A stretch of DNA of 56,855 nt. It comes from Octopus bimaculoides. Taxonomy: Eukaryota. Location of the stretch: contig NC_068983.1 in NCBI RefSeq assembly GCF_001194135.2, forward strand, positions 24,916,153 through 24,973,007, in the 5' to 3' direction. Below the pieces are notes generated by a model, which was not told the origin of the DNA, did not search any database, and saw only the letters and a program-made list of their open reading frames with translations. Every line of letters starts with the position of its first letter. Position 1 is the first letter of the stretch. The position numbers and the translations under genes were made by a program. This document shows, piece after piece, positions 403-38,079 of this stretch.

Positions 403-552
403 GTTGTTCAGAAGAACCTACTGTTTGCATTGGGCAGTGCTGTTACAAAAGATTTGATTAATAACACAATCTATAAGAAACACTTCTTGGAGAATTTTGA
501 TTTTGCAACTCTTGAAAATGAGATGAATTGGCATTATAATGAACGAGAACAG
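403..552 (+). CDS. GH10 exon (VVQKNLLFALGSAV...FDFATLENEMNWHYNEREQ), phase 0-0
   Basis: ttttag acceptor ending at 402, donor gtaggt at 553; GH10 FGxAV and ENEMxW motifs. Confidence 0.92.

Positions 553-38079: not shown

What the first reader, a model, noticed from the sequence alone, without database searches (positions are those of the whole stretch)
403..38079. GH10 glycoside hydrolase fused to five WSC carbohydrate-binding domains in an apparent cephalopod
Seen: 16 phase-consistent exons give GH10 barrel, beta-sandwich, linker, WSC, linker, WSC, WSC, linker, WSC, WSC, stop. All 40 WSC cysteines are present and no exon has an in-frame stop, which fits purifying selection. No C-terminal TM or GPI signal is visible. 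Knowledge: GH10 enzymes are retaining endo-xylanases or multifunctional glycanases, known in animals mainly from herbivorous gastropods and some other invertebrates. WSC modules bind polysaccharides in fungal enzymes and occur in animal Kremen, polycystin-1 and WSCD proteins. I do not know a characterised GH10 + tandem-WSC protein. Inference: a secreted, multivalent glycan-binding hydrolase in a carnivore, more plausibly acting on microbial, algal or prey glycans (defence, egg or skin protection, digestion) than on plant xylan.
Basis: partly seen in the sequence, partly recalled or inferred. Interest (0 to 1): 0.8.

Follow-up and report, generated by a model that had tools for sequence, protein, structure and literature searches.

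The report
Octopus GH10 glycanase with five WSC modules
The window holds most of one real octopus gene for a secreted sugar-cutting enzyme (GH10 family) fused to five WSC sugar-binding modules; the protein is already in public databases as an unstudied prediction, and its substrate pocket is altered in a way not seen in its 77 closest relatives.

Summary
Sixteen + strand exons (403-38079) with AG/GT borders give a GH10 domain, a small beta domain and five complete WSC domains (40 cysteines) ending at one stop. My spliced model is letter-for-letter identical to XP_014788452.1 (Octopus bimaculoides LOC106882324, "uncharacterized protein").

- **Correction:** exon A (ends phase 0) cannot join exon B (starts phase 2). 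A 56-nt exon, present in O. sinensis and Argonauta, lies in an N gap.
- **Consequence:** that gap split the gene into two NCBI models. The upstream one (LOC106882323) carries the signal peptide and a CBM_4_9 module, outside the window.
- **Conservation:** the fusion recurs in O. sinensis, O. vulgaris and Argonauta under strong purifying selection (pN about 0.1, pS about 0.75).
- **Beyond octopods:** a single-WSC version occurs in stony corals.
- **Literature:** no paper describing it was found.
- **New point:** both catalytic glutamates are kept, but the three non-catalytic residues that hydrogen-bond the -1 sugar are replaced (K to N, N to H, Q to E). Only octopods show this among the 80 closest GH10 sequences.

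Most likely it is a secreted, multivalently anchored glycanase with non-canonical specificity. Substrate and tissue are untested.

The parts
403..552 (+). Exon A: start of the GH10 barrel (VVQKNLLFALGSAV...LENEMNWHYNEREQ), phase 0 to 0. Codon 526-528 is AAT (Asn) where GH10 normally has the -1/-2 subsite Lys.
   Evidence: It is 100% identical to XP_014788451.1. Pfam GH10.
2688..3640 (.). N gap that most probably hides the missing 56-nt GH10 exon (18 codons + 2 nt; orthologues read DEETYED(A/S)D(K/A)IM(A/G)IL(E/K)KH...). The alternative location is gap 1444-2163.
   Evidence: The exon is present in O. sinensis and Argonauta proteins and in Argonauta DNA about 1.1 kb upstream of exon B. It is absent from the readable window. 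The A/B phases require it.
1261..1308 (+). Spurious terminal exon (DSITETMLLRNDRKML*) used by RefSeq model XP_014788451.1. It is not part of the real protein.
   Evidence: locates it. It has no counterpart in the orthologues.
4304..4441 (+). Exon B: GH10 (..VRVRGHSIFWAQPQMQQNWL...RYRD), phase 2 to 2. The acceptor at 4304 is homologous to the Argonauta acceptor.
9222..9393 (+). Exon C: GH10 acid/base region WDVNHEM. Glu codon at 9247-9249. His codon at 9244-9246 replaces the family-invariant Asn.
10599..10709 (+). Exon D: GH10, GLGAEGHF. Glu codon at 10662-10664 replaces the conserved Gln of the Q-x-H motif.
12794..13009 (+). Exon E: GH10 nucleophile region WLTEVD (Glu codon 12842-12844) and the conserved Trp residues (ILWGFWAGNHW).
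14102..14312 (+). Exon F: last barrel helix plus five beta strands of a small CarboxypepD_reg-like beta-sandwich.
   Evidence: The alignment to 7d88 runs through it. The AF2 model of the Argonauta orthologue has strands 535-585 at pLDDT 84-97. PF13620 is sub-threshold in bacterial homologue P0049.
18139..18198 (+). Exon G: 60-nt phase 1-1 Pro/Ser/Thr linker (APPATSPDIATLEGSQMKTP). Absent from the Argonauta model.
   Evidence: Present in the O. sinensis, O. vulgaris and O. bimaculoides RefSeq/GenBank models.
20881..21206 (+). Exon H: WSC1 (single exon).
   Evidence: Pfam WSC E 4e-21, profile 1-82/82. 8 Cys.
23010..23232 (+). Exon I: Ser/Thr/Asn-rich linker with 7 N-glycosylation sequons.
   Evidence: Conserved in the O. 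sinensis and Argonauta proteins.
24093..24264 (+). Exon J: first half of WSC2.
25208..25341 (+). Exon K: second half of WSC2.
27516..27791 (+). Exon L: WSC3. It has a tandem NAGNAG acceptor (27516 or 27519), giving isoforms with or without one Glu.
   Evidence: Isoforms X1/X2 in O. bimaculoides and O. sinensis differ by this residue.
31044..31187 (+). Exon M: phase 1-1 linker, paralogous to exon I.
   Evidence: Its Argonauta counterpart is at L001 58459-58600.
33055..33226 (+). Exon N: first half of WSC4, split at the same place and phase as WSC2.
35490..35611 (+). Exon O: second half of WSC4.
37796..38079 (+). Exon P: WSC5 and the stop codon TAA at 38077-38079. AATAAA signals lie at 38325 and 38446.

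Best explanation
**What it is.** The window carries all but the 5' end of a single Octopus bimaculoides gene. It is annotated as two RefSeq loci, LOC106882323 and LOC106882324, because a 56-nt exon falls in an assembly gap.

**Encoded protein (about 1,230 aa).** The order of parts is:
1. signal peptide;
2. CBM_4_9 (CBM22-like) module;
3. GH10 (beta/alpha)8 barrel, embedded in a small CarboxypepD_reg-like beta-sandwich;
4. Pro/Ser/Thr linker;
5. WSC1, then a glycosylated linker, WSC2, WSC3, a second linker, WSC4 and WSC5, then the stop.

**How it most likely works (inferred).**
- The protein is secreted.
- The five disulfide-knotted WSC modules, and perhaps the N-terminal CBM, bind a long-chain or insoluble polysaccharide multivalently.
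- They hold the GH10 domain on it, and that domain cleaves by the retaining double-displacement mechanism through Glu (WDVNHEM) and Glu (WLTEVD).
- The three non-catalytic residues that hydrogen-bond the -1 sugar in canonical xylanases are all replaced in octopods (Lys to Asn, Asn to His, Gln to Glu), under strong purifying selection. The preferred substrate is therefore probably not ordinary beta-1,4-xylan.

**Shown:** gene structure, domain content, conservation, selection and the residue substitutions.

**Inferred:** secretion, enzymatic activity, glycan binding by the WSC modules, and the altered specificity.

**Unknown:** substrate and tissue.
For: **Gene model.**
- Splice sites and phases.
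- Identity to XP_014788452.1.
- 94% identity to O. sinensis LOC115209445, with the same exons G, I and M.
- O. vulgaris CAI9719249.1 spans GH10 to WSC1.
- Argonauta P0003 plus P0176 together give CBM-GH10-5xWSC.

**Domains.**
- Pfam.
- PDB 7d88, E 1e-65.
- AF2 model of the Argonauta orthologue, pLDDT above 90 over the barrel. Foldseek to 7d88 gives TM 0.91; 2w5f (CBM22-GH10) also matches.

**Selection (Octopus versus Argonauta).**
- GH10: pN 0.116, pS 0.774.
- WSC1-3: pN 0.093, pS 0.723.

**Active site.**
- Both catalytic Glu, the two His, the Asp and the Trp residues are conserved.
- H, E and N occur at the Asn126-, Gln203- and Lys47-like positions only in octopods.
- The other 77 sequences have N in 77, Q in 75 and K in 62.
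- The roles of these residues (TmxB Lys71, Asn152, Gln228 hydrogen-bond the -1 xylose) come from PMC6163442.
- The catalytic pair of the closest structure is confirmed by the E182A/E280A entry 7d89 and PMC6408826.

**WSC as a glycan binder.**
- SiWsc3 (three WSC domains) binds long beta-1,3-glucan.
- ThCrd2 is a beta-1,3-exoglucanase carrying a WSC domain (PMC9024836).
- The PorAlcOx WSC binds xylans and chitin/beta-1,3-glucan; TrLOx has five WSC domains that bind chitin (PMC11611005).

**One-ORF precedent.** A coral-type homologue has GH10 and WSC in a single uninterrupted ORF (L002).
Against: - No transcript or protein evidence was available here. All orthologous proteins are computational predictions.
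- One coding exon is unread in this assembly.
- The three -1 subsite substitutions could equally mean loss of hydrolytic activity.
- WSC domains can also mediate protein-protein contacts (Kremen-Dkk, PMC9024836).
- WSC folds in the AF2 model were low confidence because the alignment was shallow.
- The Argonauta model lacks linker exon G, so that exon may be optional.
Confidence: 0.6

Rival explanations
1. It is a canonical digestive endo-beta-1,4-xylanase, a relic of the molluscan GH10 repertoire. It would digest xylan from algae or from prey gut contents, with the WSC modules acting simply as xylan-binding CBMs.
For: - GH10 family membership with the catalytic pair intact.
- Molluscan GH10 genes are mainly expressed in the hepatopancreas, and O. 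bimaculoides keeps one GH10 (PMC7560691).
- A fungal WSC domain binds xylans (PMC11611005).
- The O. vulgaris annotation names it endo-1,4-beta-xylanase.
Against: - All three hydrogen-bonding residues of the -1 xylose subsite are replaced, uniquely in octopods among the 80 closest GH10 sequences.
- Octopods are carnivores, and GH9/GH10 are contracted in the cephalopod (PMC7560691).
Confidence: 0.2
2. It is a pseudo-enzyme or lectin. The GH10 domain would no longer hydrolyse and would serve, with the CBM and the five WSC modules, as a multivalent glycan-recognition protein (for example in pattern recognition, mucus or egg-coat structure).
For: - Three substitutions of otherwise near-invariant substrate-binding residues.
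- Seven putative binding modules against one catalytic module.
- WSC domains act as lectins (PMC9024836).
Against: - Both catalytic glutamates are retained across Octopus and Argonauta, as are the His that supports the nucleophile, the Asp of TExD and the subsite Trp residues.
- Pseudo-enzymes usually lose at least one catalytic residue.
- pN in the barrel is as low as in the WSC domains.
Confidence: 0.15
3. There are two neighbouring genes, a GH10 gene ending after exon F and a separate WSC-repeat gene. Gene-prediction pipelines would have fused them artificially.
For: - No transcript data were seen here.
- If intron F is retained, the frame reads on for 38 codons to a stop (ORF 14072-14428), so a GH10-only isoform is conceivable.
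- Exon H contains an in-frame ATG (20856) followed by a short hydrophobic stretch.
Against: - The phases match at every junction F to G to H.
- Four annotations span the junction: RefSeq models for O. bimaculoides and O. sinensis, and GenBank records for O. vulgaris and Argonauta.
- The hydrophobic stretch before exon H is the polypyrimidine tract of a strong acceptor.
- Coral-type homologues carry GH10, the beta domain and WSC in one continuous ORF on a single contig.
Confidence: 0.05

Closest known systems
XP_014788452.1 / XP_014788453.1 (O. bimaculoides LOC106882324 isoforms X1/X2; UniProt A0A0L8FMS1 'WSC domain-containing protein') and XP_014788451.1 (LOC106882323)
   Same: They are the same gene. 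XP_014788452.1 is identical to my spliced exons B (from its internal Met) to P. XP_014788451.1 contains exon A and the upstream signal peptide and CBM_4_9.
   Different: The public annotation splits the gene in two, adds a spurious terminal exon at 1261-1308, starts the second model at an internal Met, and gives no function.
Octopod orthologues: O. sinensis LOC115209445 (XP_029633731.2 / XP_036356851.1), O. vulgaris CAI9719249.1, Argonauta hians (P0003 + GAB1606541.1)
   Same: They share the architecture, the exon structure, the five WSC domains and the H/E/N active-site substitutions. Identity is 94% (O. sinensis) and 73% (Argonauta).
   Different: All are uncharacterised and partly truncated or split models. 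Argonauta lacks linker exon G.
Coral GH10-WSC proteins (Orbicella faveolata LOC110064540, Oculina patagonica ACROYT_G044099, Logan contig SRR12053375_19238)
   Same: GH10 of the same subfamily, followed by the beta domain, a linker and a C-terminal WSC, in an animal.
   Different: They have one WSC instead of five and keep the canonical Asn and Gln (the Lys position is not covered in P0127). The GH10 is only about 37% identical, and the WSC is 27-37% identical to the octopus WSC domains. Whether the fusion is ancestral or convergent is unresolved.
Bacillus sp. KW1 XynA (PDB 7D88/7D89), GH10 xylanase with side activities on cellulosic substrates
   Same: It is the closest solved structure: E 1e-65 by sequence, with the alignment running through the C-terminal beta strands. 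Foldseek TM is 0.91 to the Argonauta model. The catalytic Glu pair is the same (PMC6408826).
   Different: It is bacterial and intracellular, with no signal peptide, CBM or WSC. It has the canonical Lys/Asn/Gln in the -1 subsite.
CBM22-GH10 xylanases (e.g. C. thermocellum Xyn10B, PDB 2W5F) and bacterial CBM_4_9-GH10-CarboxypepD_reg enzymes (Acetivibrio spp.)
   Same: N-terminal CBM_4_9/CBM22-type module followed by a GH10 of this subfamily and the small beta-sandwich.
   Different: They carry dockerins, Fn3 or CBM3 modules instead of WSC, and are prokaryotic and intronless.
Fungal WSC-appended enzymes and lectins (T. harzianum ThCrd2 beta-1,3-exoglucanase, P. oryzae PorAlcOx, T. reesei TrLOx with five WSC, S. 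indica WSC3 lectin)
   Same: The logic is the same: WSC module(s) tether a secreted catalytic domain or lectin to wall polysaccharides, and multi-WSC arrays give glycan affinity (PMC9024836, PMC11611005).
   Different: The catalytic families differ (GH55-type glucanase, AA5 oxidases), the organisms are fungi, and none is a GH10.
Molluscan digestive GH10 enzymes (e.g. Ampullaria crossean multifunctional cellulase/xylanase)
   Same: GH10 enzymes encoded by a mollusc genome (PMC7560691, PMC6408826).
   Different: They are single-domain enzymes of herbivores, with no WSC reported. Their sequences were not compared here.

Membership tests
Glycoside hydrolase family 10 (CAZy GH10, clan GH-A) | Sequence match to the family profile above the curated threshold | tested here: met
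   PF00331: 107.8 bits against a cut-off of 22.1, profile 12-300/311. 135 PDB GH10 chains match at E <= 1e-3.
Glycoside hydrolase family 10 (CAZy GH10, clan GH-A) | (beta/alpha)8 barrel fold | tested here: met
   AF2 model of the Argonauta orthologue (74-84% identical to the window's GH10 exons A-C, E and F): pLDDT above 90 over residues 210-530. Foldseek to 7d88 gives TM 0.91, rmsd 1.7 A. The window protein itself was not modelled.
Glycoside hydrolase family 10 (CAZy GH10, clan GH-A) | Catalytic acid/base Glu (end of strand 4) and nucleophile Glu (TExD, end of strand 7) | tested here: met
   Glu at 9247-9249 and 12842-12844. They align with Glu182/Glu280 of XynA, which are the residues mutated in 7d89. 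Both are invariant in 80/80 sequences.
Glycoside hydrolase family 10 (CAZy GH10, clan GH-A) | Conserved Asn immediately before the acid/base Glu (N-E motif), plus the conserved Lys (ENxxKW) and Gln (QxH) that hydrogen-bond the -1 sugar | tested here: not met
   The window has His (9244-9246), Asn (526-528) and Glu (10662-10664). The 77 nearest non-octopod GH10 sequences have N in 77/77, K in 62/77 and Q in 75/77. Residue roles are from PMC6163442.
Glycoside hydrolase family 10 (CAZy GH10, clan GH-A) | Retaining hydrolysis of beta-1,4-xylosidic (or related) bonds | not testable with these tools
   This needs an enzyme assay.
WSC domain (PF01822) | Full-length profile match above the curated threshold | tested here: met
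   Five domains, each covering profile 1-82/82, at 67.6-75.5 bits against a cut-off of 27.8.
WSC domain (PF01822) | Eight conserved cysteines (four disulfides) and the CGG motif | tested here: met
   8 Cys in each of the five domains. CGG is present in all five (sequence). The feature definition is from PMC9024836.
WSC domain (PF01822) | PAN/Apple-like fold | tested here: inconclusive
   The AF2 model shows the helix and two strands per WSC, but pLDDT is mostly below 70 because the alignment is shallow.
WSC domain (PF01822) | Carbohydrate binding | not testable with these tools
   This needs binding assays. The precedents are fungal (PMC9024836, PMC11611005).
CBM_4_9 / CBM22-type module (N-terminal, outside the window) | Profile match above threshold and a beta-sandwich fold ahead of the GH10 | tested here: met
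   PF02018: 29.8 bits against a cut-off of 25.9 for the O. bimaculoides N-terminus. AF2 shows a beta-sandwich at residues 40-200, pLDDT 83-91. Foldseek aligns about 550 columns to CBM22-GH10 2w5f. Assignment to CBM22 specifically was not tested.
CarboxypepD_reg-like beta-sandwich (PF13620) | Profile match | tested here: inconclusive
   - No Pfam hit for the octopus tail.
- Sub-threshold hits occur in bacterial homologues: P0049 residues 500-552 after the barrel, and P0182 residues 191-218 before it.
- AF2 shows two strands before and five after the barrel at high confidence.

The most novel reading that the evidence does not exclude
In the octopod lineage a GH10 enzyme was retargeted to a substrate not known for this family.
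- It replaced all three hydrogen-bonding residues of the -1 subsite (K to N, N to H, Q to E) while keeping the catalytic pair.
- It gained a five-fold WSC lectin array.
- Candidate substrates are a beta-1,3-linked or C2/C3-modified wall glycan of fungi, oomycetes, algae or bacteria.
- It would work in defence of skin, eggs or gut rather than in nutrition.
Probability: 0.2. Interest if true: 0.75.

Novelty: new variant of a known kind. Interest (0 to 1): 0.45.

Why it matters
- **A new specificity in a well-studied family.** GH10 is one of the best-studied glycanase families, and its -1 subsite is considered invariant. A lineage that keeps the catalytic machinery under strong purifying selection but swaps all three sugar-contacting residues is a natural experiment in specificity. 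It could reveal a new GH10 activity.
- **An unstudied module combination in animals.** The WSC array (five modules in octopods, one in corals) shows that animals, not only fungi, use WSC modules to tether secreted enzymes. No paper found describes this for GH10.
- **A practical correction.** The RefSeq annotation of O. bimaculoides splits this gene in two because of a gap. Surveys that count GH families from such models (for example one GH10 in the octopus, PMC7560691) miss its real architecture.

Tried and rejected
- **First homologue search.** The search with a partial draft found only the upstream RefSeq fragment. It gave the species but not the architecture.
- **Missing exon.** I searched the readable sequence with a 7d88-derived peptide and with orthologue proteins by tblastn. 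It was not found, so it was assigned to a gap.
- **Orthologue DNA.** The look-up of encoding contigs failed for P0001 and P0002, so no O. sinensis DNA was available for dN/dS. Argonauta DNA was used instead, and dS is saturated.
- **Origin of the fusion.** A neighbour-joining tree of GH10 domains places octopods in a 16-member clade that also contains the cnidarian sequences. The octopod branch is long and there are no support values. I do not use it to decide between an ancestral and a convergent fusion, or between vertical descent and horizontal transfer.
- **Bacterial contamination rejected.** The gene has 15+ spliceosomal introns full of octopus interspersed repeats and retroelement fragments.
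- **Bacterial promoter/terminator scan**: irrelevant to a eukaryotic gene, and no signal.
- **Literature searches that found nothing:**
  - the locus and protein accessions;
  - the run accession of the coral-like contig;
  - Cex residue numbers.
- **GH10 plus 'WSC domain' search**: 12 fungal genome or secretome papers by title (not read); none is about an animal GH10-WSC protein.

Full report
**1. What is in the sequence**

The window is AT-rich eukaryotic DNA (37% GC) with 14 N gaps. On the + strand I found 16 coding exons by reading stop-free segments and splice sites. Their coordinates are:

- A 403-552
- B 4304-4441
- C 9222-9393
- D 10599-10709
- E 12794-13009
- F 14102-14312
- G 18139-18198
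- H 20881-21206
- I 23010-23232
- J 24093-24264
- K 25208-25341
- L 27516-27791
- M 31044-31187
- N 33055-33226
- O 35490-35611
- P 37796-38079

Every exon has an AG acceptor behind a pyrimidine tract and a GT donor. Exons B to P join in frame for 919 codons and end at one TAA (38077-38079). The coding sequence in the window totals 2,911 nt.

Pfam confirms the content:
- GH10 at E 8e-31, profile 12-300 of 311.
- Five full-length WSC domains at E 1e-18 to 4e-21.

Each WSC has its eight cysteines.

**2. The gaps, tested first**

Exon A ends in phase 0 and exon B begins with the last base of a codon, so they cannot be joined directly.

- O. sinensis and Argonauta orthologues have 22 residues between ...NE(P/R)EQ and RGHS.
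- In Argonauta genomic DNA these come from a 56-nt exon (18 codons + 2 nt). It lies about 1.1 kb upstream of the exon homologous to B, whose acceptor matches window position 4304.
- No such exon exists in the readable window. It is therefore in an N gap, most likely 2688-3640.
- All other gaps are intronic. The flanking exons abut without missing residues in the orthologues.
- The 10-N gap at 27477-27486 is 30 nt upstream of the exon L acceptor.

**3. Identity**

- Exon A is 100% identical to XP_014788451.1 (O. bimaculoides LOC106882323). That model also carries an upstream signal peptide and a CBM_4_9 module, then ends in a spurious exon at 1261-1308.
- The last 905 residues of my model are identical to XP_014788452.1 (LOC106882324 isoform X1; UniProt A0A0L8FMS1, 'WSC domain-containing protein').
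- Isoform X2 lacks one Glu because of a NAGNAG acceptor at 27516/27519.

The window is therefore one O. bimaculoides gene that the public annotation split at the gap. The full protein is about 1,230 aa: signal peptide, CBM_4_9, GH10 with a small beta-sandwich, then five WSC domains separated by linkers.

**4. Is the fusion real?**

The same GH10-to-WSC continuity is predicted in several octopods:
- O. sinensis: 94% identity, with the same linker exons G, I and M.
- O. vulgaris: CAI9719249.1, spanning GH10 to WSC1.
- Argonauta hians: P0003 gives CBM-GH10-WSC1-3. The next model, GAB1606541.1, gives linker M-WSC4-WSC5.

Between Octopus and Argonauta, synonymous sites are saturated while non-synonymous change is low:
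- GH10: pS 0.774, pN 0.116.
- WSC1-3: pS 0.723, pN 0.093.

This is strong purifying selection on both halves.

The exon pattern is linker, split WSC, single-exon WSC, and it occurs twice (I, J+K, L and M, N+O, P). WSC2 and WSC4 are 55% identical. This points to a tandem duplication older than the Octopus-Argonauta split.

No transcript data were available here, so all orthologue evidence is from predictions. The exception is a coral-type contig in which GH10, the beta domain and WSC sit in one uninterrupted ORF.

**5. How widespread is it?**

An exhaustive HMMER search of 1.84 billion representatives with the O. sinensis protein gave 14,128 hits.

- Among the best 150, 76 have GH10 only and 90 have WSC only.
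- Only the octopod cluster and P0127 have both.
- P0127's named relatives with GH10+WSC are stony corals: Orbicella faveolata LOC110064540 and Oculina patagonica. A sea-anemone relative (Actinia tenebrosa, a partial model) shows GH10 only.
- The coral proteins carry one WSC and the canonical Asn and Gln.
- A crude tree cannot say whether the fusion is ancestral or convergent.

The literature searches found no description of a GH10-WSC protein in animals. The molluscan GH survey counts one GH10 in O. bimaculoides and does not mention WSC (PMC7560691).

**6. The catalytic domain**

- The closest solved structure is Bacillus sp. KW1 XynA (7d88, E 1e-65). The alignment runs through the C-terminal strands.
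- An AF2 model of the Argonauta orthologue is confident over the CBM, the barrel and a beta-sandwich. That sandwich is built from two strands before and five after the barrel.
- The model superposes on 7d88 with TM 0.91 and also matches CBM22-GH10 2w5f.
- PF13620 (CarboxypepD_reg) is detected below threshold in bacterial homologues at exactly these flanks.
- Both catalytic glutamates are present (WDVNHEM, WLTEVD). They correspond to Glu182/Glu280 of XynA, the pair mutated in 7d89 (PMC6408826).

In an alignment of the 80 closest GH10 domains, three positions differ only in octopods:

| Position (C. fimi Cex numbering, from memory) | Other 77 sequences | Octopods |
|---|---|---|
| Residue before the acid/base Glu (Asn126) | Asn in 77 of 77 | His |
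| Gln of the QxH motif (Gln203) | Gln in 75 of 77 | Glu |
| Lys of the ENxxKW motif (Lys47) | Lys in 62 of 77 | Asn |

- These are the three non-catalytic residues reported to hydrogen-bond the -1 xylose in GH10 (TmxB Lys71, Asn152, Gln228; PMC6163442).
- Their codons in the window are 9244-9246, 10662-10664 and 526-528.

**7. Mechanism proposed**

- **Shown:** a conserved, selected, multi-domain protein with an intact catalytic pair and a remodelled -1 subsite.
- **Inferred:**
  - It is secreted.
  - The WSC array, and perhaps the CBM, binds a long-chain or insoluble polysaccharide multivalently, by analogy with SiWsc3, ThCrd2, PorAlcOx and TrLOx (PMC9024836, PMC11611005).
  - The linkers carry 10 of the 17 N-glycosylation sequons and probably act as glycosylated spacers.
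  - The GH10 domain cleaves by the retaining mechanism, probably with a specificity other than plain beta-1,4-xylan.
- **Rivals:** an ordinary digestive xylanase, a non-catalytic lectin, or two artificially fused genes. They are weighed in the rivals section.

**8. Verdict**

The gene is genuine and conserved. It is already a public but uncharacterised prediction, and a simpler GH10-WSC form exists in corals.

What is new here:
- the corrected full architecture;
- the cause of the split annotation;
- the octopod-specific triple substitution in the substrate pocket.

It is a new variant of a known enzyme kind and of moderate interest. It would be of higher interest if the altered pocket proves to encode a new GH10 specificity.

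Noticed in passing
window 1261-1308 and 403-552 / 4304-38079: The RefSeq annotation splits this gene into LOC106882323 and LOC106882324. The second starts at an internal Met in exon B.
   Followed up: yes
window 27511-27520: A tandem NAGNAG acceptor (ggcAGAAG|GA) lies at exon L. 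Both O. bimaculoides and O. sinensis have isoform pairs that differ by one Glu here.
   Followed up: yes
window 25680-25751 (+): A tRNA-like element lies in the intron between exons K and L (Rfam tRNA 34.7 bits). ARAGORN reports an abnormal 4-base anticodon. It is probably a tRNA pseudogene or a tRNA-derived SINE.
   Followed up: partly
window 18741-19064 (+), 42077-44078 (+), 55208-56313 (-): Fragments of reverse-transcriptase ORFs (Pfam RVT_1, mostly below or near threshold). These are decayed non-LTR retroelements, one of them inside the intron between exons G and H.
   Followed up: partly
window 54394-54816 (-): A 140-aa ORF with a C2H2 zinc finger (Pfam E 3e-7) lies next to the retroelement RT fragment. 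It may belong to the element or be an exon of another gene.
   Followed up: no
window 39366-39746 (-): A 126-aa ATG... ORF (GTG start in the list) on the minus strand, 1.3 kb downstream of the gene's stop. It has no Pfam match, so its status is unknown.
   Followed up: partly
window 7684-8175, 28853-30700, 36090-37550, 52528-52790; also 5563-5840 and 10956-11233: Families of interspersed SINE-like repeats (137-230 nt, 60-90% identity) and long mono-, di- and trinucleotide runs fill the introns and flank most N gaps. One 278-nt pair is 96% identical.
   Followed up: no
L002 (Logan SRR12053375 contig) 264-1475; P0178, P0179: Stony corals (Orbicella, Oculina) and a coral-like contig encode GH10 + beta domain + one WSC in a single ORF, with the canonical Asn and Gln. 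All are annotated as uncharacterised.
   Followed up: partly
P0003 model residues 218-242 and 535-585; window exon F 14102-14312: The small beta-sandwich next to the GH10 barrel is discontinuous, with two strands before the barrel and five after it. Bacterial homologues show sub-threshold CarboxypepD_reg matches on both sides.
   Followed up: partly
L001 (Argonauta hians) 49076-49378 and 58459-59378: The Argonauta annotation also splits the gene. Linker M, WSC4 and WSC5 are a separate partial model 9 kb downstream.
   Followed up: yes
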